A stretch of 64,000 nt of DNA from Rebecca billardiae RCC1528 (lineage: Eukaryota > Protista > Haptophyta). The DNA is taken from positions 2,852,001-2,916,000 of the forward strand of contig OZ251227.1 in NCBI GenBank assembly GCA_965240325.2, in the 5' to 3' direction. The notes under the pieces were generated by a model. It made no database searches, was not told where the DNA came from, and was given only the letters and a program-made list of their open reading frames with translations. Shown here piece by piece: positions 24,017 through 42,436 of the stretch (position 1 is the stretch's first letter; each line of letters begins with the position of its first letter). The position numbers were made by a program, and so were the translations under genes.

Positions 24017-25195
24017 TCATAATTCGATCCACGGTGGCACCAACGACGCGGCTGGACGATCTCTGAGCGCTGCCAACTGGGCTAGCGCCTCGGCGCGCAG
24101 CACGGCCGGGATGACGTGCGCGAGCCACACGTCTTCGATCTCGGACGTGTCGCTGCGCCCAAGCTGACGAGCTAGCGCGACGCCGACCAGGAGCAGCTGC
24201 ACGGCGCGCGCGCGCGTGCTCGTGCGCATCAGCCTGTGCGAGTGCGGGCTCCACGGGACGCCGTGCTGCACGATGGCGCGCGCGCGCTCGTCAGGGACGG
24301 CTTCCAGGGCGAGGCTGAGCGGCGTCGGCGCGTCGGGGGCGCCATCGCTCGCGCGCGGGTCCGCGCCGTCGGCGAGCAGCTCGAGGACCGAGTCCAGCGC
24401 CAGCAGCGAGAAGTGGTGCAGGGGACTCACCCAGCGGCGCGTCTGCTCGACCCACTGCACCAGCTCGGCCGGCCTGCGCGCGTCAGGGCCGGCGCGGGCA
24501 AGCGCGCCGCGGTCTGCGCCGTGCGCGCACAGCTGCTGCGCCACGTGCAGCCGTCGCGTGTGGCACAGCGGCGCGCCCGCCGCGCCCTGCTGGTTTGGGT
24601 CTGCCCTCGCACGAAGCAGGGCGACTGTCAGCCCGACGTGGTTGAGCGCGCTCGTGATGATGAGCGGCGTCATGTGATCGGCATGGCGGGCAAGCGATGG
24701 GTCGGCGCGGGCGGCGAGGAGCACGCGCACGAGGCGCTCGTCCGCATGGGCGCACGCATCGCACAGCGGCGTCCAGCCGTCGTGCAGCCGCTGGTTGGCG
24801 TCGGCACGCGCGTGGACGAGCTCGAGCGCGCACTCCGGCTGGCGCGCGCGGATGCTGGCGATCAGCGCGGTCCAGCCCTGCGAGTCGTGCGCGTCCACGG
24901 CCGCGTTGGCGCGCAGCAGCGCGCAGACGCACTCGACACTGCCTGCCGTCGCCGCACACATGAGCGGGCTGAAGCCGTCATGCCGCGCATGCGCGGCCGA
25001 AGCTCCGTGCCTGAGGAGCGCGCGCGCGGCGTCCGCCCATCCATTCTCGCACGCGCACATGAGCGCGGTCGTGCCGTCGGGTAGCTCGGACTCGACGTCA
25101 GCGCCGGCGGCGAGCACGAGCTCCAGCCCTGTCGCATGCCCGAACTGTGCCAGGTAGTGTATCGTGGTGGAGAGGCCGAGGACCATGGCTGCCAA
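24017..25195 (-). CDS. Ankyrin-repeat protein; the original ATG is probably at 26848, separated by a transposon; downstream ATG at 25186
   Basis: GTTALMCAC, GFSPLMCAA, GWTALIAS, GWTPLCDAC, MTPLIITS repeats. Confidence 0.85.
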   Translation of the reverse strand: MAAMVLGLSTTIHYLAQFGHATGLELVLAAGADVESELPDGTTALMCACENGWADAARALLRHGASAAHARHDGFSPLMCAATAGSVECVCALLRANAAVDAHDSQGWTALIASIRARQPECALELVHARADANQRLHDGWTPLCDACAHADERLVRVLLAARADPSLARHADHMTPLIITSALNHVGLTVALLRARADPNQQGAAGAPLCHTRRLHVAQQLCAHGADRGALARAGPDARRPAELVQWVEQTRRWVSPLHHFSLLALDSVLELLADGADPRASDGAPDAPTPLSLALEAVPDERARAIVQHGVPWSPHSHRLMRTSTRARAVQLLLVGVALARQLGRSDTSEIEDVWLAHVIPAVLRAEALAQLAALRDRPAASLVPPWIEL

Positions 25196-27224: not shown

Positions 27225-28154
27225 TTACCCTGCAGCGCGTTCGGCACGATTCGCCGTACTCCCCGCCGCCGCTTTCGAGCCGGACTCCGCCTCGCTGCTC
27301 GCCACCGCAGCCTGCGCCTGCTGCCTCTTCGCACTGCCGGGCACCTCGTACATGGCGCGCGCGTCCGTGGAGACAATCTCGTGGGCGGGCAGCACGAGCG
27401 CGCTCAGCTGCTTGCCATAGCAGCAGCCCGAGTCGAGGCCCGTGGCGTGCACCTCGCGCTGCAGGCCGCGCTTCGCGTCGTGCCCGAACACGATGTGCCC
27501 GAGCTCGCCCCCGTACACCTTCGCCCACGGCTCCGCGCCCTCCGCCCCCTTCTCCAGCCCCTCGAGCCCGCCGCCCTCGGCCGCTGGGCGCACGTTGCGC
27601 ATTTTGAAGAGGTCGAGCGGGCGCTGCTCTGAGAGGGGTCGGCCCGGCACGATGCCGGCGTGCACGACGAGCACGTTGAGCCACGGGAGCGAGAGCGAGT
27701 ACGGCAGGCCCTCCAGGTACGCGACGTCCTCCGGCGAGAGGTCGCGAGCATAGTCGTACGATGGCGGAGGCGCGCTGTCAGCCCACTTGCCCGTGCGGCG
27801 CAGGACGCTCAGCAGGGCGTCGTCGTGGTTGCCACGCACGCACGGCACCTGGCGCTCGCGGGCCCACCGCACGACCTGCACCGATTTCGGCCCCTTGTTC
27901 ACCAGGTCGCCCACGAGGACGAGCACGTCCTCGCCCTCGCGGTAGTTGAGCTTGGCGAGCAGGTCGCACAGCTCGTCAAAGCAGCCGTGCACGTCGCCAA
28001 CGACGATGGTGCGTGCCGCTCGGGGCGGGGCGGCGAGGACGACGTGCATGGGGGAGGGAAGCGGGACGCCATTGGGCGAGCGCGTCGCCCCCGAGAAGGC
28101 GCGCACCGCCCAGGGAAGCGCGACGAGGGCGGCGAACGCGGCGACCGCCATCAT
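27225..28154 (-). CDS. ApaH/PrpE-like metallophosphoesterase (bis(5'-nucleosyl)-tetraphosphatase family) with N-terminal targeting peptide
   Basis: GDVHGC, GDLVNKGP, RGNHD, VHAG, FGHDA, GLDSGC motifs. Confidence 0.92.
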   Translation of the reverse strand: MMAVAAFAALVALPWAVRAFSGATRSPNGVPLPSPMHVVLAAPPRAARTIVVGDVHGCFDELCDLLAKLNYREGEDVLVLVGDLVNKGPKSVQVVRWARERQVPCVRGNHDDALLSVLRRTGKWADSAPPPSYDYARDLSPEDVAYLEGLPYSLSLPWLNVLVVHAGIVPGRPLSEQRPLDLFKMRNVRPAAEGGGLEGLEKGAEGAEPWAKVYGGELGHIVFGHDAKRGLQREVHATGLDSGCCYGKQLSALVLPAHEIVSTDARAMYEVPGSAKRQQAQAAVASSEAESGSKAAAGSTANRAERAAG

Positions 28155-28202
28155 CGAAGAACCTGGTCGTCCGGACGAATTCGCCGCGAACCCGATGCTC
28201 CG

Positions 28203-29192
28203 CAGGGATGGGCACAAGCGATTCGCCGAATCGCCAATTCGCCGAATTCGCCGATTCGCGAATTCGCGAACGCTCGGCGCGTTCGCCGAAAGTGGCGAAA
28301 TGCCCCGATCCGGGCGTTATTGCCCTTGCCGGACTCAGTATCTTCCCGGCCGGCGCGACGGCCGGCGGCCGCCGATCGGCGCATGCGACCTGCGCGCCGC
28401 CGCGTGCGCGCCCGCCGCGCCGAGGCGAGCGGCGTACGACGCGAACTCGCCAAGCGGGCTGCCGAACCTGATGCGCTTGGCGCTTGCATGCCTCCGCAGT
28501 GGCGGCAGCAGCCAGTCGTCCAGCGCGGAGAGGGCGCGTCCCCGCTCGGCGCCGCTGCGTTGAACGGCGGCTGCGAGCAGCTCTGCCTTGCACGCGTCGG
28601 TGACGCTCAGGGTAACGTAGCGCATGCCCACTACGAGTGCGCCGACGTGCACTCTGACGAGGCCTCAGGCGAGCGGCGAGACGACTTCTGGCGCGGGCGT
28701 TGCGTGCACACTCCCGGCGTGCCGAGCAGCGTCAGAATAGCTGCGCGCCGGCATTGGTGGTGGGTCGGCGAGGCTGGTGTTCGCCGGGGGGCGCGGCAGA
28801 CTCGAGCACATTGCTTCATGGCACGCATGCAGTGAGACACGCCGCAAACTTAGCGAAGACTAAGGAGCTGGCGGCTGAGGTCCGTCGGTCAGCCAGAGTC
28901 ACGCCTCACAGTCCACACGGCGGTGCGTCCGGCGCGCAACGGTCTGACCCAAGCCGCACGCGTCCCAGAGCTCGTAGGCTGCACAGAGGCGCCATCGCTT
29001 GGGCATGGCCCCTGGTAGTATACGGGCTGTGCCACACGTCATACTGACACTCGTAGCCTCTTGTTGGGGTGATACATGGCGCAAAAATGTTCGATTCCCG
29101 GAAATTCGCCATATTCGGCGAATTTCGGCGAATTCGGCGAATTCGGCGAATTCGCGAACGCTGAGGCCATTCGGCGAATCCGCCCATCCCTG
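28203..29192. mobile_element. Non-autonomous hAT element, 990 bp
   Basis: TIR CAGGGATGGGC...GCCCATCCCTG; 8-bp TSD ATGCTCCG (28195-28202, 29193-29200); subterminal TTCGCCGAA/TTCGGCGAA repeats at both ends. Confidence 0.95.
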
Positions 29193-29299
29193 ATGCTCCG
29201 TGTCCAAGGAGCGTGCTGACAACAATCATCCTTGGGCCTCGCCCCGATTGTCACCACGGAGGCACCGCGCCGCGCGCACGCGTGGAGCATACTCGCGTG

Positions 29300-31114
29300 A
29301 TGGAGGACAGCGCTGAGGTGAAGCTCCTTCGGCGCGCATCTACGCGGGGTGATGCGCGCGCCGCGCTCCGTCTAGCCGAGCGCCTCGCGCTCGGGGACGG
29401 TGTCGCCAAGAATGAGCGCGAGGCGGCCAGGCTGTACCACGTTGCCGCCGAGCGCGGGGTGGCGGATGCTCAAGTCAAGGTTGGCGACATGTATCGAGAT
29501 GGGGCGATGTCTCTGGCCCGAGATCTCGGCAAGGCAGTGCACTGGTACCGGCTGGCCGCCAGGCAGGGCCACGCAGCAGCGCAGGGCTCTCTGGGCTCGT
29601 GCTTCGCGCAAGGCGAGGGCGTGGCGCAGGATGTGGCCGAGGCGGCACGCTGGTACCGGCTGGCGGCCGAGCAGGGCTTTGCAAACGCGCAGTACAGCCT
29701 CGGCGTGTGCTGCCAGAGGGGCGAGGGCGTGTCGCAGGATATGGCCGAGGCGGCGCGCTGGTTCCGGCTGGCGGCCGAGCAGGGCTTTGCAAGCGCGCAG
29801 TGCAACCTGGGCATGTGCTGCCAGAAGGGCGAGGGTGTGCCGCAGGATCTGGCCGAGGCGGTGCGCTGGTACCGGCTGGCGGCCGAGCAGGGCTACGCAG
29901 CCGCGCAGTGCAACCTGGGCTCATGCTGCCAGAATGGCGAGGGCGTGGCGCAGGATCTGGCCAAGGCGGTGCGCTGGTACCGGCTGGCGGCCGAGCAGGG
30001 CTTTGCAAGCGCGCAGAACAACCTGGGCGCTTGCTTCCAGAAGGGCGAGGGTGTGACGCATGACATGGCCGAGGCGGCGCGCTGGTACCGGCTTGCGGCC
30101 GAGCAGGGCTACGCAGCCGCGCAGTGCAACCTGGGCATGTACTGCGAGAAGGGCGAGGGTGTGCCGCAGGATATGGCCGAGGCCGCGCGCTGGTACCGGC
30201 TGGCGGCCGAGCAGGGCTGTGCAGACGCGCAATTCAACCTGGGTGTGTGCTGCCTGAAGGGCGAGGGCGTGCCGCAGGAACTGGCTGAGGCTGCGCGTTG
30301 GTACCGACTGGCGGCCGAGCAGGGCTACGCAGCCGCGCAGTACAACCTGGGTGTGTGCTGCCAGAAGGGCGAGGGCGTGCCGCAGGATATGACCGAGGCC
30401 GCACGCTGGTACCGGCTTGCGGCCGAGCAGGGCCTTGCAGACGCGCAGTGCACCCTGGGCTTTTGCTGCAAGGCGGGTGAGGGTGTGCCGCAGGAGATGG
30501 CCGAGGCGGCGCGCTGGTACCGGCTGGCGGCCGAGCAGGGCCACGCACTCGCGCAATTCAACCTGGGCTTGTGTTGCAAGGAGGGTGAGGGCGTGCCGCA
30601 GGATCTGGCCGAGGCGGTGCGCTGGTACCGGCTGGCGGCCGAGCAGGGCTACGCAGCCGCGCAGTGCAACCTGGGCATGTGTTGCAAGAAGGGCGAGGGT
30701 GTGTCGCAGGACCTGGCCGAGGCGGCGCGCTGGTACCGGCTGGCGGTGGACGCTGGGCACGCTCCGGCCTTCTTTGGGCTTGGGCAGCTGCTGGTGGCGG
30801 GCAAAGGCGTGCAGCGCGATGTGAAGGAGGGCGCAGCATTGCTGCGCCGTGCGTACGAGCTCGAGAGCTTGTGTGAGCCAAGTCTGGCGCTCCTCGCGTT
30901 GGCTGGGGAGCGCGAGGTGGTGTCGAAGTGCTGCATCATGTGTGCACAGACGGGTCCTGGCCTGAAGAAGTGCGACCGGTGTCACGTGGCTGTCTTCTGC
31001 TCGCACGACCACCTGCGGTGCGCGTGGAAGGCGCACAAGCCGCACTGTCGCGCGTGGCGCACGACCTCAATCGAGTCCTCGACCGCGGACGTCGTCGCGG
31101 ACGTCTCATCCTAA
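29300..31114 (+). CDS. Sel1-like repeat protein (14 repeats) with C-terminal MYND finger, copy 1
   Basis: 36-aa AQxNLGxCxxxGEGVxQDxAEAxRWYRLAAEQG units; CIMC..CDRC....FCS.DH...AW..HK..C. Confidence 0.93.
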   Translation: MEDSAEVKLLRRASTRGDARAALRLAERLALGDGVAKNEREAARLYHVAAERGVADAQVKVGDMYRDGAMSLARDLGKAVHWYRLAARQGHAAAQGSLGSCFAQGEGVAQDVAEAARWYRLAAEQGFANAQYSLGVCCQRGEGVSQDMAEAARWFRLAAEQGFASAQCNLGMCCQKGEGVPQDLAEAVRWYRLAAEQGYAAAQCNLGSCCQNGEGVAQDLAKAVRWYRLAAEQGFASAQNNLGACFQKGEGVTHDMAEAARWYRLAAEQGYAAAQCNLGMYCEKGEGVPQDMAEAARWYRLAAEQGCADAQFNLGVCCLKGEGVPQELAEAARWYRLAAEQGYAAAQYNLGVCCQKGEGVPQDMTEAARWYRLAAEQGLADAQCTLGFCCKAGEGVPQEMAEAARWYRLAAEQGHALAQFNLGLCCKEGEGVPQDLAEAVRWYRLAAEQGYAAAQCNLGMCCKKGEGVSQDLAEAARWYRLAVDAGHAPAFFGLGQLLVAGKGVQRDVKEGAALLRRAYELESLCEPSLALLALAGEREVVSKCCIMCAQTGPGLKKCDRCHVAVFCSHDHLRCAWKAHKPHCRAWRTTSIESSTADVVADVSS

Positions 31115-31567
31115 TTCGTCAGCACATGCCGCCGCAGCGCACGCCTCACGAGTCACCGCGACTGATGGCTGTAAGCTACTGCGTAGTGCGTACAGCACGG
31201 CGCGGCATCGGCCCGACTGACGGCGACGTGCGCGACGTCGGCGGTCGGACCCTCGGACGACGCCGATGATCGACGGCAGCATCAATGTTAATGTAGCTAC
31301 GTGCACGGGCATCCTCATCAGCATTCAGCATTGTAACGCGACTACTGTACATACCATACTACGACGACTGCTGTCATTCGAATGCGTATTCGGCCATGTC
31401 CGACGGTGGCGTTGCGTGATGAATACTACGAGCAGACGAATTCGGGTGATACTGAATTTCGGTCGCGGGAGTCCGGTGATCGTGTCCGGATGGCACCGAC
31501 CAACCGTCAACCCCGCGCTCGCCTCGCCGCAGCGCGCCGCCCGCCACGCGTGGAGCGCACTCGCGTG

Positions 31568-32950
31568 ATGGAGGACAGCGCTGAGGTGAAGCTCCTTCGG
31601 CGCGCATCTGCGTGGGGCGATGCGCGCGCCGCGCTCCGTCTAGCCGAGCACCTCGCGCTCGGGGACGGTGTCGCCAAGAATGAGCACGAGGCGGCCAGGC
31701 TCTACCACGTTGCCGCCGAGCGCGGGTTGGCGGATGCTCAAGTCCAGGTTGGCGCCATGTATCGAGATGGGGCGATGTTTCTGGCCCAGGATCTCGGCAA
31801 GGCAGTGCACTGGTACCGGCTGGCCGCCAGGCAGGGCCACGCAGCAGCGCAGTGCTCTCTGGGCTCGTGCTTCGCGCAAGGCGAGGGCGTGCCGCAGGAT
31901 CTGGCCGAGGCGGTGCGCTGGTACCGGCTGGCGGCCGAGCAGGGCTTTGCAAGCGCGCAGTGCAATCTGGGCGTTTGCTGCAAGAAGGGCGAGGGCGTGG
32001 CGCAGGACATGGCCGAGGCGGCGCGCTGGTACCGACTGGCGGCCGAGCAGGGCTACGCAGGTGCGCAGTACAACCTGGGTGTGTGCTGCGGGAAGGGCAA
32101 GGGTGTGCCGCAGGATATGACCGAGGCGGCGCGGTGGTACCGGCTGGCGGCCGAGCAGGGCCACGCACTCGCGCAATTCAACCTTGGCTTGTGTTGCAAG
32201 GAGGGTGAGGGCGTGCTGCAGGATCTGGCCGAGGCGGTGCGCTGGTACCGGCTGGCGGCCGAGCAGGGCTACGCAGCCGCGCAGTGCAACCTGGGCATGT
32301 GTTGCAAGAAGGGCGAGGGTGTGTCGCAGGACCTGGCCGAGGCGGCGCGCTGGTACCGGCTGGCGGCCGAGCAGGGCTGTGCAGACGCGCAATTCAACCT
32401 GGGCGTGTGTTGCAAGAAGGGTGAGGGCGTGGCGCAGGATCTGGCCGAGGCGGCGCGCTGGTACCGGCTGGCGGCCGAGCAGGGCCGTGCAAACGCGCAG
32501 TTCATTCTGGGCTGGTGCTGCCTGAATGGCGAGGGCGTGCCGCAGGATATGGCCGAGGCGGCGCGCTGGTACCGGCTGGCGGCCGAGCAGGGCTATGCTA
32601 AGGCCCACTTTGGGCTCGGGTGGCTGCTGGTGGCTGGCAAAGGAGTGCAGCGCGATGTGAAGGAGGGCGCAGCATTGCTGCGCCGTGCGTACGAGCTCGA
32701 GAGCTTGTGTGAGCCAAATGTGGCGCTCATCGCATTGGCTGGGGAGCGCGAGGTGGTGTCGAAGTGCTGCATCGTGTGTGCACAGACGGGTCGTGGTCTG
32801 AAGAAGTGCGACCGGTGTCACGTGGCTGTCTTTTGCTCGCACGACCACCTGCGGTGCGCGTGGAAGGCGCACAAGCCGCACTGTCGCGCGTGGCGCACGA
32901 CCTCAATCAAGTCCTCGACCGCGGACGTCGTCGCGGACGTCTCATCCTAA
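31568..32950 (+). CDS. Sel1-like repeat protein (10 repeats) with MYND finger, copy 2
   Basis: Paralog of copy 1, 144 aa (4 repeats) shorter. Confidence 0.93.
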   Translation: MEDSAEVKLLRRASAWGDARAALRLAEHLALGDGVAKNEHEAARLYHVAAERGLADAQVQVGAMYRDGAMFLAQDLGKAVHWYRLAARQGHAAAQCSLGSCFAQGEGVPQDLAEAVRWYRLAAEQGFASAQCNLGVCCKKGEGVAQDMAEAARWYRLAAEQGYAGAQYNLGVCCGKGKGVPQDMTEAARWYRLAAEQGHALAQFNLGLCCKEGEGVLQDLAEAVRWYRLAAEQGYAAAQCNLGMCCKKGEGVSQDLAEAARWYRLAAEQGCADAQFNLGVCCKKGEGVAQDLAEAARWYRLAAEQGRANAQFILGWCCLNGEGVPQDMAEAARWYRLAAEQGYAKAHFGLGWLLVAGKGVQRDVKEGAALLRRAYELESLCEPNVALIALAGEREVVSKCCIVCAQTGRGLKKCDRCHVAVFCSHDHLRCAWKAHKPHCRAWRTTSIKSSTADVVADVSS

Positions 32951-33403
32951 TTCGTCAGCACATGCCGCCGCAGCGCACGCCTCACGAGTCACCGCGACTG
33001 ATGGCTGTAAGCTACTGCGTAGTGCGTACCGCACGGCGCGGCATCGGCCCGACTGACGGCGACGTGCGCGACGTCGGCGGTCGGACCCTCGGACGACGCC
33101 GATGATCGACGGCAGCATCAATGTTAATGTAGCTACGTGCACGGGCATCCTCATCAGCATTCAGCATTGTAACGCGACTACTGTACATACCATACTACGA
33201 CGACTGCTGTCATTCGAATGCGTATTCGGCCATGTCCGACGGTGGCGTTGCGTGATGAATACTACGAGCAGACGAATTCGGGTGATACTGAATTTCGGTC
33301 GCGGGAGTCCGGTGATCGTGTCCGGATGGCACCGACCAACCGTCAACCCCGCGCTCGCCTCGCCGCAGCGCGCCGCCCGCCACGCGTGGAGCGCACTCGC
33401 GTG

Positions 33404-35218
33404 ATGGAGGACAGCGCTGAGGTGAAGCTCCTTCGGCGCGCATCTGCGTGGGGCGATGCGCGCGCCGCGCTCCGTCTAGCCGAGCACCTCGCGCTCGGGG
33501 ACGGTGTCGCCAAGAATGAGCACGAGGCGGCCAGGCTCTACCACGTTGCCGCCGAGCGCGGGGTGGCGGATGCTCAAGTCCAGGTTGGCGCCATGTATCG
33601 AGATGGGGCGATGTTTCTGGCCCAGGATCTCGGCAAGGCAGTGCACTGGTACCGGCTGGCCGCCAGGCAGGGCCACGCAGCAGCGCAGTGCTCTCTGGGC
33701 TCGTGCTTCGCGCAAGGCGAGGGCGTGCCGCAGGATCTGGCCGAGGCGGTGCGCTGGTACCGACTGGCGGCCGAGCAGGGCTTTGCAAGCGCGCAGTACA
33801 ACCTGGGCGTGTGCTGCCAGAAGGGCGAGGGCGTGTCGCAGGATATGGCCGAGGCGGCGCGCTGGTTCCGGCTGGCGGCCGAGCAGGGCTTTGCAAGCGC
33901 GCAGTGCAACGTGGGCATGTGCTGCCAGAAGGGCGAGGGTGTGCCGCATGATCTGGCTGAGGCTGCGCGCTGGTTCCGGCTGGCGGCCGAGCAGGGCGAC
34001 GCAGTTGCGCAGTGCAACCTGGGCTCATGCTGCCAGAATGGCGAGGGCGTGGCGCAGGATCTGGCCAAGGCGGTGCGCTGGTACCGGCTGGCGGCCGAGC
34101 AGGGCTTTGCAAGCGCGCAAAACAACCTGGGCGTTTGCTTCCAGAAGGGCGAGGGTGTGACGCATGACATGGCCGAGGCGGCGCGCTGGTACCGGCTTGC
34201 GGCCGAGCAGGGCTACGCAGCCGCGCAGTGCAACCTGGGCATGTACTGCGAGAAGGGCGAGGGTGTGCCGCAGGATATGGCCGAGGCCGCGCGCTGGTAC
34301 CGGCTGGCGGCCGAGCAGGGCTGTGCAGACGCGCAATTCAACCTGGGTGTGTGCTGCAAGAAGGGCGAGGGCGTGCCGCAGGAACTGGCTGAGGCTGCGC
34401 GTTGGTACCGACTGGCGGCCGAGCAGGGCTACGCAGGCGCGCAGTTCAACCTGGGTGTGTGCTGCCAGAAGGGCGAGGGCGTGCCGCAGGATATGACCGA
34501 GGCGGCACGCTGGTACCGGCTGGCGGCCGAGCAGGGCCTTGCAGACGCGCAGTGCACCCTGGGCTTTTGCTGCAAGGCGGGTGAGGGTGTGCCGCAGGAT
34601 ATGGCCGAGGCGGCGCGCTGGTACCGGCTGGCGGCCGAGCAGGGCCACGCACTCGCGCAGTACAACCTGGGCTTGTGTTGCAAGGAGGGTGAGGGCGTGC
34701 CGCAGGATCTGGCCGAGGCGGTGCGCTGGTACCGGCTGGCGGCCGAGCAGGGCTACGCAGCCGCGCAGTGCAACCTGGGCATGTGTTGCAAGAAGGGCGA
34801 GGGTGTGTCGCAGGACCTGGCCGAGGCGGCGCGCTGGTACCGGCTGGCGGTGGACGCTGGGCACGCTCCGGCCTTCTTTGGGCTTGGGCAGCTGCTGGTG
34901 GCGGGCAAAGGCGTGCAGCGCGATGTGAAGGAGGGCGCAGCATTGCTGCGCCGTGCGTACGAGCTCGAGAGCTTGTGTGAGCCAAGTCTGGCGCTCCTCG
35001 CATTGGCTGGGGAGCGCGAGGTGGTGTCGAAGTGCTGCATCATGTGTGCACAGACGGGTCGTGGTCTGAAGAAGTGCGACCGGTGCCACGTGGCTGTCTT
35101 CTGCTCGCACGACCACCTGCGGTGCGCGTGGAAGGAGCACAAGCCCCACTGTCGCGCGTGGCGCACGATCTCAATCGAGTCCTCGACCGCGGACGTCGTC
35201 GCGGACGTCTCATCCTAA
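33404..35218 (+). CDS. Sel1-like repeat protein (14 repeats) with MYND finger, copy 3
   Basis: Paralog; 5' part matches copy 2 and 3' part matches copy 1. Confidence 0.93.
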   Translation: MEDSAEVKLLRRASAWGDARAALRLAEHLALGDGVAKNEHEAARLYHVAAERGVADAQVQVGAMYRDGAMFLAQDLGKAVHWYRLAARQGHAAAQCSLGSCFAQGEGVPQDLAEAVRWYRLAAEQGFASAQYNLGVCCQKGEGVSQDMAEAARWFRLAAEQGFASAQCNVGMCCQKGEGVPHDLAEAARWFRLAAEQGDAVAQCNLGSCCQNGEGVAQDLAKAVRWYRLAAEQGFASAQNNLGVCFQKGEGVTHDMAEAARWYRLAAEQGYAAAQCNLGMYCEKGEGVPQDMAEAARWYRLAAEQGCADAQFNLGVCCKKGEGVPQELAEAARWYRLAAEQGYAGAQFNLGVCCQKGEGVPQDMTEAARWYRLAAEQGLADAQCTLGFCCKAGEGVPQDMAEAARWYRLAAEQGHALAQYNLGLCCKEGEGVPQDLAEAVRWYRLAAEQGYAAAQCNLGMCCKKGEGVSQDLAEAARWYRLAVDAGHAPAFFGLGQLLVAGKGVQRDVKEGAALLRRAYELESLCEPSLALLALAGEREVVSKCCIMCAQTGRGLKKCDRCHVAVFCSHDHLRCAWKEHKPHCRAWRTISIESSTADVVADVSS

Positions 35219-35390
35219 TTTGTCAGCACATGCCGCCGCAGCGCACGCCTCACGAGTCACCGCTACTGATGGCTGTAAGCTACTGCATAGTGCGTACAGC
35301 ACGGTGCGGCATCGGCCCGACTGACGGCGACGTGCGCGACGTCGGCGGTCAGACCGGACGACTCATGTCATGATCGACGGCAGCATCAAT

Positions 35391-36502
35391 CGGATATCCC
35401 ACTGCGATCCTATCCCATAGGATTCAATCCTACTATGGCATAGGATTAGGATGGCCCCAGGGACGACTCAGCAGACGACATTTTCTCATGTTGCCGAATG
35501 GTACGACTGCACCTAGGGGTCGGTAGCAGTGTCGCCACCATCCGCCAGAGCGAGCTTGTTGTGATTTTCGACCACCACCGCATGTTTTGGGCTCCACGGA
35601 TGGAGCGCGTGACTAGCCGTCGCGGTCGTTGCCGCCTTGCGACTCCACGGTGGCAACGCCGACCAACATGTGGCACTTGTGATGACACCCAGCTTGATGC
35701 TCACACATCGTGGTTCACTGTGTTCGACCGGAGCCGTACGAGGTTCAATCACAATGCGTTTTGGTCCTCGCCAAGCATGGCATTGTACGTCACGCCGGGG
35801 CTGCGCGCACAAGCCGCTGCGGGTCGCTCGCGTCGTCAGGTGGTTGCGATCGAGCATCGGCACGCATGTAGAGCAAGCCTCGGAGGTAGCCGGAACATCT
35901 TGCCATGTCGCGTGCGTGGATGGTATCGCACCTGTAGACACGCCATGCGTGTGCCGCAGTCGATTTGCGCGACGCTCGACCCGCACGCTCTTGGATTCGT
36001 GGGCTAGTGGTCCACAAGGACGGCCGCCACCATCGTGGGAGGTCCGTGGCCGCACGCACGATGGCGGTTGCCCTCTCTTCGCCCCGCCCCAGAATCGGTG
36101 TGCCACGGGCAGCAACGCGCCTGGCGGCGTGGGCGGCGGTGCGGGCGGCAGCGCGGGCATCCGGTGCGAGCACTCGCCTGCGCCGTCCGTGCCCAGGGTC
36201 GCCGCTCGGCTGCCAGGGGCGAGCAACTAACACTGTCATGCCGATCCTATGTAGCCGTCCCTGGCGCGGATCCTATGGCATAGGATCGCGCGCGCGCGCG
36301 GGGTCACGCGCGCGCGCGCGCGACCGCCGTGGCAGTGGCGGCAGGCGGAGATGGTGTGTGTCGACAGCCGGTAGAGTTGTGTGTACGATATAGCAACACT
36401 GATGATCGTATGCGCAGAACTGAGCCGCTGGCGCTCTGGTGAACTCATCCTATGCCATAGGTCTGATAGGATCAGATCCTATCTGTTGCAGTGGGATATC
36501 CG
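35391..36502. mobile_element. Non-autonomous TIR DNA transposon, 1112 bp, 4-bp TSD CAAT (superfamily unassigned)
   Basis: 15-bp perfect TIR CGGATATCCCACTGC; CAAT at 35387-35390 and 36503-36506; ATCCTAT..ATAGGAT subterminal hairpins; absent from the two paralogous spacers. Confidence 0.93.
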
Positions 36503-36781
36503 CAATGTAGCTACGTGCACGGGCATCCTCATCAGCATTCAGCATTGTAACGCGACTACTGTACATACCATACTACGACGACTGCTGTCATTCGAATGCG
36601 TATTCGGCCATGTCCGACGGTGGCGTTGCGTGATGAATACTACGAGCAGACGAATTCGGGTGATACTGAATTTCGGTCGCGGGAGTCCGGTGATCGTGTC
36701 CGGATGGCACCGACCACCCGTCAACCCCGCGCTCGCCTCGCCACAACGCGCCGCCCGCCACGCGTGGAGCGCACTCGCGTG

Positions 36782-38711
36782 ATGGAGGACAGCGCTGAGG
36801 TGAAGCTCCTTCGGCGCGCATCTGCGTGGGGCGATGCGCGCGCCGCGCTCCGTCTAGCCGGGCGCCTCGCGCTCGGGGACGGTGTCGCCAAGAATGAGCA
36901 CGAGGCGGCCAGGCTGTACCGCGTTGCCGCCGAGCGCGGGGTGGCGGATGCTCAAGTCAAGGTTGGCGACATGTATCGAGATGGGGCGATGTCTCTAGCC
37001 CGAGATCTCGGCAAGGCAGTGCACTGGTACCGGCTGGCCGCCAGGCAGGGCCACGCAGCAGCGCAGTGCTCTCTGGGCTTGTGCTTCGCGCAAGGCGAGG
37101 GTGTACCGCAGGATCTGGCCGAGGCGGCGCGCTGGTACCGGCTGGCGGCCGAGCAGGGCTTTGCAGGCGCGCAGTTCAACCTGGGCGTGTGCTGCGAGAA
37201 GGGCGAGGGCGTGGCGCAGGACATGGCCGAGGCGGCGCGCTGGTACCGACTGGCGGCGGAGCAGGGCTTTGCAAACGCGCAATTCAACCTGGGCGTGTGC
37301 TGCGAGAAGGGCGAGGGCGTGCCGCAGGATGTGGCCGAGGCGTTGCGCTGGTACCGGCTGGCGGCCGAGCAGGGCTTTGCAGGCGCGCAGTACAACCTGG
37401 GCTCATGCTGCCAGAATGGCGAGGGCGTGGCGCAGGATCTGGCCAAGGCGGTGCGCTGGTACCGGCTGGCGGCCGAGCAGGGCTTTGCAAGCGCGCAAAA
37501 CAACCTGGGCGTTTGCTTCCAGAAGGGCGAGGGTGTGACGCATGACATGGCCGAGGCGGCGCGCTGGTACCGGCTTGCGGCCGAGCAGGGCTACGCAGCC
37601 GCGCAGTTCAACCTGGGCGTGTGCTGCGAGAAGGGCGAGGGCGTGGCGCAGGACATGGCCGAGGCGGCGCGCTGGTACCGACTGGCGGCGGAGCAGGGCT
37701 TTGCAAACGCGCAATTCAACCTGGGCGTGTGCTGCGAGAAGGGCGAGGGCGTGCCGCAGGATGTGGCCGAGGCGTTGCGCTGGTACCGGCTGGCGGCTGA
37801 GCAGGGCTTTGCAGGCGCGCAGTACAACCTGGGCGTGTGCTGTCAGAAGGGCGTGGGTGTGCCGCTGGATATGGCCAAGGCGGCGCGCTGGTACCGGCTT
37901 GCGGCCGAGCAGGGCTACGCAGCCGCGCAGAACAACCTGGGCTTGTGCTGCCAGAAGGGCGAGGGCGTGCCGCAGGATGTGGCCGAGGCGGCGCGCTGGT
38001 ACCGGCCGGCGGCCGAGCAGGGCTACGCAGCCGCGCAGAACAACTTGGGCTCGTGCTGCAAGAAGGGCGAGGGCGTGCCGCAGGATGTGGCCGAGGCGGC
38101 GCGCTGGTACCGACTGGCGGCCGAGCAGGGCTTTGCAGGCGCGCAGTTCAACCTGGGCGTGTGCTGCCAGAAGGGCGAGGGCGTGTCGCAGGATATGGCC
38201 GAGGCGTTGCGCTGGTTCCGGCTGGCGGCCGAGCAGGGCCTTGCAAACGCGCAATTCATTCTGGGCTGGTGCTGCCTGAATGGCGAGGGCGTGCCCGCAA
38301 GATACGGCAGAGGCGGCGCGCTGGTACCGGCTGGCGGTGGACGCTGGGCACGCTCCGGCCAATTTCTGGCTTGGGCGGCTGCTGGTGGCGGGCAAAGGAG
38401 AGCAGCGCGATGTGAAGGAGGGCGCAGCATTGCTGCGCCGTGCGCACGAGCTCAACAGCTCGTTGGATCCAAGTAAGGCGCTCCTCGCGTTGGCTGGGGA
38501 GCGCGAGGTGGCGTCGAAGTGCTGCATCATGTGTGCACAGACGGGTCGTGGTCTGAAGAAGTGCGACCGGTGTCACGTGGCTGTCTTCTGCTCGCACGAC
38601 CACCTGCGGTGCGCGTGGAAGGCGCACAAGCCGCACTGTCGCGCGTGGCACGCGGCCCCAACTACCAAGTCCTCGACCGCGGACGTCGTCGCGGACGTCT
38701 CATCACCATAA
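36782..38711 (+). pseudogene. Sel1-like repeat (15 repeats) plus MYND, copy 4, with a +1 frameshift near 38294-38296 (or a sequencing error)
   Basis: GTGCCCGCAAGAT versus GTGCCGCAGGAT in other repeats; the last repeat and MYND continue in another frame to 38711. Confidence 0.75.
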
Positions 38712-39011
38712 TGACCGCGTTCCGCGGTCCTTTTCTGCATAGAATCAACGCAGTTGGGGGCCCGCCGTGGCCGTGCAATCGCGGCTCTCCGCCGCGCGTA
38801 GTCGTGGCAGTTCGCCAGTTGAAGTCGGTTCTGACTTCTGTGAGATCAGACTGACAAAGCTATTAGACATCAATAATTAGTCCGACCGTCGCCCTGCCTG
38901 CGACCGCGAGACTCATAATTCACACTTCACACAATCACAGCAGCGGCCCCTGAGACCGCACCCGGCACCGGTCAAATCGGAAGTCCGTCTCGGACAACTA
39001 GCAGCTGCCAA

Positions 39012-39157
39012 ATGTCCAACTGGCTGATCAGCTCGGATCCGACCCGTCCGCGATCGTGCCATCGGCATCGGACGTCCGTCTGACAACTATTACTAGCTGC
39101 CTGAAACTGTCCAACTCTGGCTGATCAGCTCGGATCCGACCCGTCCGCGATCGTGCC
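39012..39157 (+). repeat. Direct repeat of about 48 bp, 2 copies
   Basis: TGTCCAACT(CT)GGCTGATCAGCTCGGATCCGACCCGTCCGCGATCGTGCC at about 39013 and 39108. Confidence 0.9.
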
Positions 39158-39803: not shown

Positions 39804-42436
39804 CACAGTGCCGGAAAACTGCTCAGGGTGACGTTTTAAGTTGTCCGCACCACTAGTCGAATCATCGGACAATTCTGAAGCGGTGCGCCTAAATTCGGCG
39901 CACCATAGGCGCGTCGAATCGTGGCACAGACCTTGGTAGCAGGCCACACCTGAGCGCGCTGCGCGCGCCGACGCGCGCTCGGCGCGGGCAAAAAATCATG
40001 CGCCGTTGGCATTACGCAGCCCCGCGCAGCGCTGTGCTCGAGCTCGGCGGCGGCGAAAGCGGGCGGGCGCACACGGCGGTGCGCGTGCGCGCTGCTCCGA
40101 GCGCAGCTGCGGCCACCCCGGCGGCATACCGCCGGTCGAGGGCACGAAAACCGATTTTTCGGGAAAATGCAGAGCAGCGGCGCCCGAGCGCGCCCGAGCT
40201 CGTCGCAGCACAGTCTCCTGGTGGCTGCGCCCCGTGAAGCCACGCCACGCGGGGCGCTGGCGTGCGCGTGGCCTGCGCCCACCGTGCGCTGCCCGATCAT
40301 GGCCGTCGACCGCTCCGAGCGCCTCACCACGCGTGCTCGAGCCCACCGATACTGACGCCCGAGCACGGTGCCGGCAGCGCTCGCAGGTGGGCGTCGGAGA
40401 AAACACGCCGGCCGAACGAGCTTGAAGCGTCCGCCGCGATGCCAACGGCAGCGGACGACGTGCGCGCCACCTCGGCGCCAGTCACCCAGCCCTTGCGCGG
40501 CGGTGCGGGCTCGCTCGTTCGCCGCCATCAGCTGCGCGCGCGCAGCCCGATCACTGCCCGCTGGTTCTGTTGTCGAGCAGCTGCGGCCTGCCACGCGCAC
40601 TGCCGGACATTGAGCCACAGCGCGAGCACGCGCCTCGTCTGGCACGCGCGAGCACTCAGCATCGTGCGTGGCCACCATGACGCGCCCATCTGCGCCAGCA
40701 GCGATGAGCACGCCGCCGTTCAGCTCGCATCGGGCTCGCTCGCGACGCAGCAACGCGCGGCCGTAGCGGCAGCAGCGGCGCCGTCGAGCACGCGCAGCAA
40801 ACAAATATGCAGCGCGGGCGAGTCGACGGTCTGGAAAATGCGCGATCACGCCACAGCAGGCTGGCAGAGCCCGCCCGAGCTGCAGCATGCCGTAGGTGCT
40901 GCCCCAAGCTCTCGACTGCCCGTAAGCGGCGGCATGTGCGGCGGCGCCGGCGGCGGCCATGCTGCCACGCCGTTGCGCGCCGCGGGGCGCCGTCGGCACC
41001 TCCGTGGTGAAGCGCACAGAGCTCGAGCCCACGGGGGCTGGCGACCGTCAAACCGACACCCCATGACGCGGGGCTGCGTGCGCCAGCTGCGCGCACTCCG
41101 TGGGCCCACCTAGCCCGCTCGAGCAGCTCGCCTTGGGTGCGCGCAGCGGCTCGAGCACACTGGTATGGGACGCCTGCCTGCGGTGCCGCCGAGCACATGC
41201 GGCCGACGGTCACTCAGCACGGGCGACTCGACGGCGGCGAGCAGGCGCGACGGCCTCGCCGCGCCGCGGAAAAGCCTGCCCGGGCTGCAGCACGCCGTAG
41301 GAGCAGCCCAGCGCCCTCCTCCGCCCTCCAGCTTCGGCGCGCGCAGCAGGCCCGGCGGCGGCCATGCTGGCGTGCCCAAGCATGAAGATGGGCGCGGCCG
41401 GCCGCGCCGTCGCAAAGCGCGCAGAACTCGAGCTCGGGGGGGCGGACGGCCGCCAAACTGGCGCGGCAGGACGTGGCACTGCGTGCGCCAGCTGCGCGCA
41501 CCCGCTGCGCCCGCGTGGCCCGTGCGAGCGCCGCGCCTCGAGCACACGCAGCTGCTCGACACAGCCACGGCAGTGTGGCTTGTGCGCGTGCACGTGATCA
41601 GTCTCAGCTCTGAGGCGCGCGCTCAGGAGGGCTGCGGCCGGGCCGAGCGCGATCTGCGCGGACGGTACAGCCTGGCGGCTCATGCCAGCCAGCCCAAAGC
41701 CCGCTCCGCCATCCGCGTCATGGCGCTCCAGCCTCTCGCGTGCTGCGCTGCAGCCGCGCTCGGCAAAGACGTCGCCCAGCCCGCCTTGCACGCGGCTGAG
41801 CAGTGGCAGCCAGGCGAAGCGTCGTCGCGGGCGAGGCTGCGCTGGGTGATGCGGCTCGGGTCGGTGGGCAAGTCGCACCCCGCCGTCGGTCGCCTCCACG
41901 CCTCAGGCTCGCTCGAGGTCAAAGACAACTGCGCGGCGCGGCGTTTGCGCGGGCGGGCCGCGGGCGTGGCGGGGTGTACGCGTGCAATGTCACAGCCTCC
42001 CACACAATTTCAGGAGGGTGAGACGCACCGCCAGCGGCACCCGCACACAATCCCACCCTGCGCGAGCCACCTGCCGTGTCGACTGAAGCATCAGGCTCGG
42101 GCGCAACCGCGGGCGGCGCATGCAAGAAGCTCGCGAAACGCACCGCGCGCGCCGTGAGGGCGAAAGGAGAGCACCCGTCAGGGCGGCGAGGAACTTGCCC
42201 AGCGCCACGCGGAAGACGACCCCAGCCCGCCTCGACGCATAGTCGGGCCCGCGAGCAGCCTCGTCGGTCTTCGCCGAGTAGATCGCGCCGCGAGCCGAGG
42301 CACCGCTCGTTTGAGGCTCCGTCCGCCGCGAAGTCGCGGCTTCCACCCGAGTTCCACTGTCCGGCCGAGACCGGATTCGCTGACTCGAGCTGCGGACCGT
42401 CCGAAGCGTCACGGAAAATTCCAATCCTGCACTGTG
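39804..42436. mobile_element. Putative non-autonomous Transib/CMC-type element with bipartite CACAGTG termini, 2633 bp
   Basis: Both ends read CACAGTGC(C/A)GGA-N12-GTGACG(T/C)TT inward. Only a 2-bp flank match (CA). No convincing protein inside. Confidence 0.55.
40870..41505 (+). repeat. Degenerate internal duplication, offset about 405 bp
   Basis: GCTGCAGCAYGCCGTAGG, CCGGCGGCGGCCATGCTG and CTGCGTGCGCCAGCTGCGCGCAC each recur about 405 bp apart. Confidence 0.75.

What the first reader, a model, noticed from the sequence alone, without database searches (positions are those of the whole stretch)
29300..38711. Tandem Sel1-MYND gene cluster with shuffled, hypervariable repeat arrays: candidate diversifying receptor system
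Seen: four head-to-tail intronless paralogs with fixed N-cap and MYND C-terminus but 14, 10, 14 and 15 Sel1 repeats. The 108-bp units share an almost invariant scaffold (GEGV.QD.AEA.RWYRLAAEQG). Variation clusters at positions 1, 3, 6, 7, 10 and 12-14 (FAS/YAA/FAN/FAG/CAD/HAL x QCN/QFN/QYN/QNN x V/M/S/L/W x QK/EK/KK/QN/LN), and these cassettes recombine combinatorially. Known: helix A of TPR/Sel1 solenoids lines the ligand groove, and highly conserved repeats with hypervariable sites underlie fungal NLR specificity and TALE-type codes. Inference: a recombination-driven specificity repertoire coupled to a MYND protein-interaction output, possibly for non-self or virus recognition.
Basis: partly seen in the sequence, partly recalled or inferred. 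Interest (0 to 1): 0.82.

Follow-up and report, generated by a model that had tools for sequence, protein, structure and literature searches.

The report
Tandem Sel1-repeat/MYND adaptor gene cluster
Four neighbouring genes of a GC-rich haptophyte alga encode coils of near-identical 36-residue Sel1 units ending in a zinc finger; the units are reshuffled by recombination and vary mainly on the predicted binding groove, but that pattern is largely generic to Sel1 repeats and nothing here shows an immune role.

Summary
Four head-to-tail + strand genes carry 14, 10, 14 and 15 Sel1 units (108 bp, no indels) and a C-terminal MYND-like finger. The fourth gene is split by a one-base insertion at 38294-38296.

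- **Binding face:** the variable positions (2, 5, 9, 12, 13, 36 of the unit) lie on helix A. They match the published concave-face positions of TPR/SLR solenoids.
- **Recombination:** a chimeric unit, a duplicated two-unit block and mosaic caps show unequal crossing-over and gene conversion.
- **Selection:** face codons evolve at or modestly above the synonymous rate (omega about 1.8, tree-based p about 0.001; two sites about 5). The one tree-free comparison (gene 1 vs gene 3) is not significant, and recombination inflates such tests.

Three points deflate the reading:
- The "invariant scaffold" is essentially the general Sel1 consensus, and the same positions vary in bacterial Sel1 proteins (rho 0.76).
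- Internal amino-acid identity (75-80%) is below the 85% used to define fungal highly-conserved NLR repeats.
- There is no NOD domain, signal peptide, expression data or strain data.

The immune or virus-recognition idea is untested. This scan has already noted the same family on other DNA of this genome (35 notes).

The parts
29300..31114 (+). Gene 1: Sel1-MYND CDS, 14 units (11 canonical 108-bp units at 29573-30760). MYND coding at 30917-31057.
31568..32950 (+). Gene 2: Sel1-MYND CDS, 10 units (7 canonical at 31841-32596). MYND coding at 32753-32893. Structure modelled.
32273..32380 (+). Chimeric unit (gene 2, unit r6). Nt 1-94 are identical to unit r12 of gene 1 and nt 73-108 to unit r7 of gene 1, which marks an unequal crossover within a unit.
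33404..35218 (+). Gene 3: Sel1-MYND CDS, 14 units, collinear with gene 1 unit for unit. MYND coding at 35021-35161.
36782..38296 (+). Gene 4, piece a: N-cap plus units r1-r12 and the first half of r13. The ORF runs on out of frame to 38476. Units r3-r4 and r7-r8 are near-identical (1 mismatch each).
38294..38296 (+). Frameshift site: a CCC run where the paralogous unit of gene 2 has CC. One extra base. This is either a real inactivation or a homopolymer assembly error.
38297..38711 (+). Gene 4, piece b (frame of ORF 38280-38711): rest of unit r13, C-terminal cap unit and MYND finger (38508-38648).
31115..31567 (+). Spacer between genes 1 and 2. It is 99.7% identical to spacer 32951-33403, and its last 278 nt are 98.9% identical to the sequence upstream of gene 4, so it is part of the duplicated unit.
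32951..33403 (+). Spacer between genes 2 and 3, a duplicate of 31115-31567.
35391..36502 (.). 1,112-bp element with perfect 15-bp terminal inverted repeats and subterminal palindromic motifs, flanked by CAAT on both sides. It is inserted in the gene 3-gene 4 spacer; the other two spacers lack it.

Best explanation
This is a lineage-specific tandem cluster of cytosolic Sel1-repeat/MYND adaptor genes in a haptophyte.

Shown:
- Each product is a right-handed Sel1-like superhelix.
- The arrays evolve in the germline by tandem gene duplication, unequal crossing-over between 108-bp units (which changes unit number, 10 to 15) and gene conversion within and between paralogs.
- Purifying selection holds the scaffold (omega about 0.1-0.25). 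Face codons change at or somewhat above the synonymous rate.

Inferred:
- The first helices line a concave groove. Groove residues (unit positions 2, 5, 9, 12, 13 and the preceding loop residue 36) differ from unit to unit around a conserved Asn at position 6, so the groove probably binds an extended peptide or protein surface.
- The constant C-terminal MYND-like zinc finger docks the protein to a constant partner, as MYND fingers do elsewhere.
- Paralogs therefore offer different groove surfaces.

Unknown: ligand, partner and biological role.
For: - Domains: Sel1 E 1e-90 to 1e-137 plus zf-MYND near its cut-off.
- Fold: AF2 pLDDT 87.9 with alternating 13-residue helices. Best solved match is 6ok3_A (TM 0.76, 40% identity), followed by other Sel1-repeat structures.
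- Unit geometry 13/7/13/3 equals that of solved SLR c5321, where first helices form the concave, less conserved face and a conserved Asn anchors a bound peptide (PMC3851747).
- Variable positions equal the TPR concave-face positions (PMC1261162).
- Recombination: chimeric unit, duplicated two-unit block, g1/g3 collinear while g1 shares its cap type with g4, spacers 99.7% identical. Incompatibility rises with distance (PHI-type test p<0.0002 at window 5, 0.02 at window 10).
- Selection: M0 omega 0.46. M2a beats M1a by 18.7 lnL units, with omega 4.9 at positions 2 and 36. For face classes defined beforehand from the TPR literature, omega is 1.76-1.86 against 0.22-0.27 for the rest, p about 0.001-0.002.
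- Localisation: the N-terminal sequence shows no long hydrophobic stretch by eye; no signal-peptide or membrane predictor was run.
- Distribution: the Sel1+MYND architecture recurs in many eukaryotic clusters, including haptophyte and diatom ones.
Against: - No expression, ligand or partner data.
- The MYND match is borderline: two copies fall below Pfam's cut-off, the sixth zinc ligand is out of register, and the tail is modelled at pLDDT <50.
- Gene 4 is frameshifted as assembled.
- The N-cap between g1 and g3 shows pN/pS about 1, and the tree-free g1-g3 face ratio of 1.7 is not significant (p 0.19).
- The codon models used a fixed tree on recombining sequences, which inflates false positives.
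Confidence: 0.6

Rival explanations
1. Dedicated diversifying recognition system. The family would be an immune-like intracellular repertoire in which recombination of units generates new specificities against viruses or other non-self, with MYND as the signalling output.
For: - Face positions have omega above 1 in tree-based tests.
- There are 32 distinct six-residue face words among 40 units.
- Unit shuffling and copy-number change are visible.
- The family is large and dispersed in this genome according to other notes of this scan (unchecked by me).
- The pattern resembles fungal NLR repeats, where variable sites map to the concave TPR face (PMC4986451).
Against: - No NOD, TIR, death-fold or other immune signalling domain.
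- Internal amino-acid identity of 75-80% is below the 85% criterion.
- The same positions vary in ordinary bacterial Sel1 proteins.
- The tree-free test is not significant.
- No strain, infection or expression data.
- No relative in viral contigs.
Confidence: 0.17
2. Neutral tolerance. The variable positions are simply the solvent-exposed helix-A positions that any Sel1 repeat tolerates. Concerted evolution keeps the rest uniform, with no selection for diversity and possibly redundant function.
For: - Per-position entropy correlates with that of bacterial Sel1 units (rho 0.76).
- Eight of the ten variable sites fall in the omega = 1 class of M2a.
- At the face codons themselves, pooled pairwise pN/pS is about 1.0.
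- The g1-g3 face ratio is not significantly above 1, and the cap is at 1.0.
- One copy is frameshifted.
Against: - Exposed helix-B and loop positions that vary in bacteria (15, 22, 26, 30) are almost invariant here. Synonymous differences still accumulate in the scaffold (pS 0.19, pN 0.03), which points to selection rather than mere homogenisation.
- LRTs reject omega = 1 for the predefined face class and for positions 2 and 36.
Confidence: 0.25
3. Assembly artefact or decaying pseudogene array. The unit orders, copy number or the frameshift would reflect mis-assembly of a 108-bp repeat, or the genes would be non-functional.
For: - Highly repetitive 108-bp arrays and 99.7%-identical spacers are hard to assemble.
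- The frameshift lies in a homopolymer.
- No full-length product of these genes appeared among the database proteins, although the window's own IGPD is there on short Logan contigs.
Against: - Each copy has its own consistent set of differences spread over caps, units and tails.
- One spacer carries a private TIR insertion.
- Three copies keep 1.4-1.8 kb reading frames with scaffold omega of 0.1-0.25.
Confidence: 0.08

Closest known systems
Bacterial and eukaryotic Sel1-like repeat (SLR) adaptor proteins (c5321/EsiB 4bwr, HcpC 1ouv, LpnE 6deh, LceB 8sxq, O. formigenes 6ok3, SEL1L/Hrd3)
   Same: - 36-residue unit with 13/7/13/3 helix-loop geometry.
- The same consensus (A-x-A-Q-x-N-L-G ... G-x-G-V ... 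W-Y-R-x-A-A-x-Q-G).
- Superhelix with first helices on the concave face.
- 40% identity and TM 0.76 to 6ok3_A.
   Different: - A C-terminal MYND-like finger instead of secretion signals or membrane anchors.
- A eukaryotic tandem gene cluster.
- Units somewhat more alike: 75-80% identity against a median of 68% in the bacterial hits.
Highly internally conserved ANK/TPR/WD repeats of fungal NLRs (Dyrka et al. 2014, PMC4986451; nwd/het-e family)
   Same: - Near-identical solenoid units.
- Unit-number differences between paralogs.
- Concerted evolution by unit exchange.
- Variable sites on the concave face with signs of omega above 1.
   Different: - No NACHT/NB-ARC or N-terminal effector domain.
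- Amino-acid identity below the 85% threshold.
- Repeat type is Sel1.
- No strain polymorphism data.
- The output domain is a MYND finger.
Solenoid-plus-MYND proteins of animals (ZMYND12 TPR+MYND, ANKMY1/2, SMYD4 TPR+SET/MYND); named from my own knowledge, not tested
   Same: A repeat solenoid combined with a MYND protein-interaction finger. The best solved MYND matches here are SMYD2, SMYD3 and DEAF1.
   Different: - Those are single-copy conserved genes with degenerate repeats.
- Here the genes form a multi-copy cluster with near-identical units.
- The MYND match is weak (E 0.02-0.7).
Sel1 repeat/MYND finger clusters of the ESM Atlas (eukaryotic; haptophyte and diatom members)
   Same: The same two-domain architecture. 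23-24 of the 30 nearest clusters carry Sel1 and zf-MYND, with feature scores of 0.94-0.95.
   Different: - Atlas hits are leads without alignment.
- Most representatives are short (110-334 aa).
- No close relative of the C-terminal tail was found by word search or in viral or metagenome contigs.

Membership tests
Sel1-like repeat (Pfam PF08238, SLR) | Profile score above the curated cut-off | tested here: met
   295-443 bits against a cut-off of 30.7, with 9-13 stretches per protein
Sel1-like repeat (Pfam PF08238, SLR) | 36-residue unit of two 13-residue antiparallel helices with 7- and 3-residue loops, forming a superhelix like solved SLR proteins | tested here: met
   AF2 helices H92-104, H112-124 and so on at pLDDT >90. 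Foldseek best match 6ok3_A at TM 0.76, also 4bwr, 8sxq, 6deh, 1ouv. Geometry as in the table of PMC3851747.
zf-MYND (Pfam PF01753) | Profile score above the curated cut-off (22.7 bits) | tested here: inconclusive
   Gene 2 scores 22.8 and gene 4 piece b 24.4 (above). Gene 1 scores 21.0 and gene 3 20.8 (below). The best solved match is the SMYD2 MYND at E 0.023.
zf-MYND (Pfam PF01753) | Eight zinc ligands in the C4-C2HC spacing | tested here: inconclusive
   In the alignment to SMYD2, seven ligands are in register. At the sixth position there is a His, with a Cys three residues later (sequence). The fold was not modelled with confidence (pLDDT <50).
Highly internally conserved NLR repeats (fungal type, Dyrka 2014) | Over 85% identity between units over at least 100 residues | tested here: not met
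   Mean pairwise amino-acid identity within genes is 74.7-79.5% and nucleotide identity 84-87.5%. The criterion is quoted from PMC4986451.
Highly internally conserved NLR repeats (fungal type, Dyrka 2014) | Central NOD (NACHT or NB-ARC) domain | tested here: not met
   Pfam finds only Sel1 and zf-MYND
Highly internally conserved NLR repeats (fungal type, Dyrka 2014) | Unit-number variation and unit exchange | tested here: met
   10 to 15 units among paralogs, a chimeric unit and a duplicated two-unit block. Variation among strains could not be tested.
Highly internally conserved NLR repeats (fungal type, Dyrka 2014) | Positive selection at concave-face codons | tested here: inconclusive
   M2a vs M1a 2*deltalnL = 37.5, with positions 2 and 36 at omega 4.9. 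The predefined face class has omega 1.76-1.86, p 0.001-0.002. The g1-g3 pair gives a ratio of 1.7, p 0.19, and recombination is present.
TALE-type repeat code | 33-35-residue TAL repeats with a two-residue specificity code that reads nucleic-acid bases | tested here: not met
   No TAL-effector family hit; the units are Sel1 units of 36 residues. Variation is spread over at least six positions per unit. Nucleic-acid binding cannot be tested here.

The most novel reading that the evidence does not exclude
The Sel1-MYND family would be a haptophyte intracellular variable-recognition system without a NOD domain. Germline shuffling of Sel1 units would create a repertoire of groove specificities for viral or other foreign proteins, and the constant MYND finger would couple recognition to a common downstream partner.
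Probability: 0.13. Interest if true: 0.8.

Novelty: new variant of a known kind. Interest (0 to 1): 0.45.

Why it matters
Marine haptophytes are under heavy viral pressure, yet their recognition and defence proteins are almost unknown. A large family of solenoid adaptors whose groove residues turn over quickly is a concrete candidate set to test for that role. It also gives a natural series of near-consensus Sel1 scaffolds with varied groove residues, which is useful for studying how Sel1 repeats bind ligands.

The controls run here also carry a warning. A pattern of conserved scaffold plus variable helix-A positions is generic to Sel1/TPR repeats, so it is not by itself evidence of an immune-like system.

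Tried and rejected
- **Single-sequence AF2 of gene 2:** pLDDT 47 with spurious strands, discarded. It was replaced by the run with alignment A1.
- **Whole-protein word search:** swamped by bacterial Sel1 proteins, with no MYND-bearing hit in the top 120.
- **Search restricted to the C-terminal 122 residues:** nothing found.
- **Scans of viral and metagenome contigs with the C-terminal tail:** no relative.
- **Literature:** no paper describing Sel1-MYND families in algae. The Seminavis and ER-calcium papers mention Sel1 only in other contexts.
- **Reads:** Assembly correctness, the frameshift, expression and strain variation remain untested.
- **Structure mapping:** model coordinates are not exposed to scripts. 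Burial and concavity were inferred from helix register and published SLR/TPR structures, not measured.
- **Intron as an explanation for the gene 4 frame change:** rejected as unlikely. The break is a single extra base inside an otherwise collinear unit.
- **Link to other elements:** I found no link between the cluster and the element noted at 39804-42436; only weak 76% inverted repeats lie there. The subterminal motif of the spacer TIR element occurs nowhere else in the window.
- **Gene 4 handling:** gene 4 was always handled as two pieces, and its broken unit r13 was left out of all codon analyses.
Full report
**What is there**

The window is 65-80% G+C throughout. Between 29.3 and 38.7 kb four + strand reading frames lie head to tail.
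- They share the start MEDSAEV (ATG at 29300, 31568, 33404, 36782) and stop at 31114, 32950, 35218 and 38711.
- Pfam finds Sel1 repeats (E 1e-90 to 1e-137; 9-13 stretches each).
- Pfam also finds a C-terminal zf-MYND match that straddles its cut-off: 20.8-24.4 bits against 22.7.
- Tandem Repeats Finder reports four arrays of period 108 with 84-86% matches and no indels.
- No further copy is in the window.
- Genes 2-4 also have an in-frame upstream ATG inside the duplicated spacer. Gene 1 does not, so MEDSAEV is the likely common start.

**Gene 4 is broken as assembled**

In its thirteenth unit a run CCC (38294-38296) stands where the paralogous unit of gene 2 has CC. The Sel1 frame then runs out of register to a stop at 38476. 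The rest of the unit, the cap and the MYND finger continue in the frame of ORF 38280-38711. This is either a very recent inactivation or a homopolymer error. I handled the two pieces apart and left the broken unit out of all codon statistics.

**Architecture of the cluster**

- The spacers between genes 1-2 and 2-3 are 99.7% identical. The last 278 nt upstream of gene 4 are 98.9% identical to them.
- The gene 3-gene 4 spacer carries a private 1,112-bp insertion (35391-36502). It has perfect 15-bp terminal inverted repeats and CAAT on both sides.
- Genes 1 and 3 are collinear unit for unit, with 0-7 mismatches per 108 nt.
- Gene 1 nevertheless shares its N-cap variant with gene 4, while genes 2 and 3 share the other variant. 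The paralogs are therefore mosaics.
- Unit r6 of gene 2 is identical to unit r12 of gene 1 over nt 1-94 and to unit r7 over nt 73-108. That is a crossover inside a unit.
- In gene 4, units r3-r4 recur as r7-r8 with one mismatch each.
- Across 37 distinct units, 49% of informative site pairs are incompatible. Incompatibility rises with distance: the PHI-type permutation test gives p<0.0002 for a window of 5 informative sites, 0.02 for 10 and 0.08 for 15, with Spearman 0.11 (p 0.001).
- The smallest window is partly inflated by within-codon coupling.
- Unequal crossing-over and gene conversion are thus shown. A "combinatorial cassette" process within units is plausible but cannot be separated cleanly from recurrent mutation at fast sites.

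**Where the variation lies**

I numbered the unit from the Ala that starts helix A (A-x-A-Q-x-N-L-G...).
- Among 40 canonical units the high-entropy positions are 2, 5, 9, 12, 13 and 36 (1.7-2.5 bits).
- Positions 6, 11, 18, 21 and 25 are intermediate, and 14 positions are invariant.

**Structure**

- A single-sequence AF2 run failed (pLDDT 47).
- With an alignment of the paralogs and 57 bacterial Sel1 hits (A1), gene 2 folds at pLDDT 87.9, with residues 1-383 mostly above 90. It forms alternating 13-residue helices: helix A covers unit positions 1-13, a loop 14-20, helix B 21-33 and a loop 34-36.
- The MYND tail stays below pLDDT 50.
- Foldseek puts the model among solved Sel1-repeat proteins: 6ok3_A (TM 0.76, 40% identity), then 4bwr, 8sxq, 6deh and 1ouv.
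- The paper on c5321 (4bwr) gives the same 13/7/13/3 geometry. It states that the first helices form the concave face, that this face is the less conserved one, and that a conserved Asn anchors a bound peptide backbone (PMC3851747).
- Magliery and Regan found TPR positions 2, 5, 9, 12, 13, 33 and 34 to be the most variable and to line the concave ligand face (PMC1261162).
- With L7, G8 and residue 11 in the same register, the variable positions here are the same set. Position 36 corresponds to TPR 34, because the SLR loops are two residues longer.
- Position 6 is Asn in 32 of 40 units.
I could not measure it on coordinates.

**Is the pattern special?**

Two controls say: less than it looks.
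- *Consensus.* The consensus of the bacterial hits is almost the same scaffold. In 533 regular units from 116 of these proteins the most variable positions are again 2, 5, 9, 12, 13, 15, 21, 22, 18 and 36. Per-position entropy correlates with that of the algal units (Spearman 0.76, p 6e-8). The bacterial set was selected by shared words with the query, which lowers its helix-B entropy somewhat.
- *Internal identity.* Pairwise amino-acid identity between units within a gene is 75-80%, and nucleotide identity 84-87.5%. The bacterial hits have a median of 68% and reach up to 89%. Dyrka et al. define highly internally conserved repeats as more than 85% identity over at least 100 residues (PMC4986451). 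That criterion is not met here.

What is distinctive is this. Exposed positions that vary in bacteria (15, 22, 26, 30) are nearly fixed here, while synonymous differences still accumulate in the scaffold (pS 0.19, pN 0.03). The scaffold is therefore under purifying selection and not merely homogenised.

**Selection**

| Test | Result |
|---|---|
| Pooled pairwise, six face codons | pN 0.40; global pS 0.21; pS at those codons 0.39 |
| M0 (own codon-model script, fixed ML tree of 37 distinct units) | omega 0.46 |
| M1a vs M2a | lnL -1078.43 vs -1059.69 (2*delta 37.5, 2 d.f.) |
| M2a site classes | 5.6% of sites at omega 4.9 (positions 2 and 36); the other eight variable sites in the omega = 1 class; 71% at omega 0.08 |
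| Face class fixed beforehand from the TPR literature | omega 1.76-1.86 vs 0.22-0.27 for the rest; omega = 1 rejected at p 0.001-0.002 |
| Face class fixed beforehand from bacterial entropy | omega 1.42, p 0.04 |
| Tree-free collinear pair g1-g3 | face pN 0.066 vs gene-wide pS 0.039 (ratio 1.7, Fisher p 0.19); other repeat sites 0.31 (p 0.003); N-cap 1.0; C-terminus 0.29 |

Fixing the face class beforehand avoids choosing sites after seeing the data. Because recombination is present, the tree-based p-values are optimistic. GC3 is 0.82-0.84, so synonymous sites may be constrained. My reading is that face sites evolve at least neutrally and probably somewhat faster. This cluster alone gives suggestive evidence for diversifying selection, not proof.

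**Organism and relatives**

- The window's IGPD protein is closest, among named proteins, to Diacronema lutheri (59%) and Prymnesium parvum (46%). The genome is therefore a haptophyte, probably nearer the Pavlovophyceae.
- The IGPD's exact sequence sits on short Logan contigs of two runs.
- No full-length Sel1-MYND product of this window is in the protein collection. That would be expected if short-read assemblies break in the arrays.
- The ESM Atlas holds many eukaryotic clusters automatically named Sel1 repeat/MYND finger, some with haptophyte or diatom members. The architecture is therefore not new to databases.
- I found no paper describing it in algae.
- Close relatives of the C-terminal tail were not found by word search or in viral or metagenome contigs.

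**Function**

*Shown:* domain content, fold, unit shuffling and the selective contrast between scaffold and face.

*Inferred from established knowledge of SLR/TPR and MYND domains:*
- The groove binds an extended peptide or protein surface.
- The MYND finger binds a constant partner.
- The proteins are cytosolic or nuclear, because by eye the N-terminus has no long hydrophobic stretch. No signal-peptide or membrane predictor was run.

*Not shown:* any immune, non-self or antiviral role.

**Relation to earlier notes of this scan**

The same family has been noted 35 times on other pieces of this genome. Four follow-ups called it fast-diversifying, and another note covers recombination on this same stretch. 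My results agree on anatomy and recombination. On selection they are more cautious, and they add two things: the bacterial-consensus control and the failed 85% identity criterion.

**Verdict**

This is a real, well-described tandem cluster of Sel1-MYND adaptor genes evolving by unequal recombination, with a variable predicted binding groove. It is a new variant of a known kind (solenoid repeat families with concerted evolution and variable binding faces). It is moderately interesting, and the immune-like reading remains a minority possibility to be tested.

Noticed in passing
window 35391-36502: 1,112-bp non-coding element with perfect 15-bp terminal inverted repeats (CGGATATCCCACTGC), several subterminal copies of a 13-bp palindromic motif (CCTATGGCATAGG) and an internal (CG)n palindrome. 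It is flanked by CAAT on both sides and is absent from the two paralogous spacers. It looks like a non-autonomous DNA transposon. Its ORFs have no Pfam match, and the motif occurs nowhere else in the window.
   Followed up: partly
window 29101-29158: Short tandem repeat (period 9/19, ATTCGGCGA-like, 3-5 copies) just upstream of gene 1, at the left edge of the cluster.
   Followed up: no
window 38976-39157: 97-bp tandem duplication (1.9 copies, with a 41-nt core 100% identical) immediately downstream of gene 4, at the right edge of the cluster.
   Followed up: no
window 28000-38000: Sustained positive GC skew (+0.09 to +0.15) over the cluster, against about 0 elsewhere. It probably reflects the G-rich coding strand of the repeated unit. 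Long spurious ORFs (up to 413 aa) also run antisense through the arrays.
   Followed up: no
proteins P0002-P0120, alignment A1: Bacterial Sel1 proteins fused to trypsin-like proteases, caspase-like domains, kinases or AAA ATPases share 50-66% identity with the algal arrays over many units. This is unusually high for a eukaryote-bacterium pair. It could reflect convergence on the consensus or an old transfer.
   Followed up: no
window 31382-31567, 33218-33403, 36596-36781: Genes 2-4 have an in-frame upstream ATG giving a 62-residue Arg/Pro-rich extension encoded in the duplicated spacer. Gene 1 lacks it. Which start is used is unknown.
   Followed up: no
window 24017-25195 (-) and 27225-28217 (-): The genes on the left of the cluster are an ankyrin-repeat protein and a calcineurin-like metallophosphoesterase. 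ORFs to the right (39.8-45.4 kb) have no Pfam match.
   Followed up: partly
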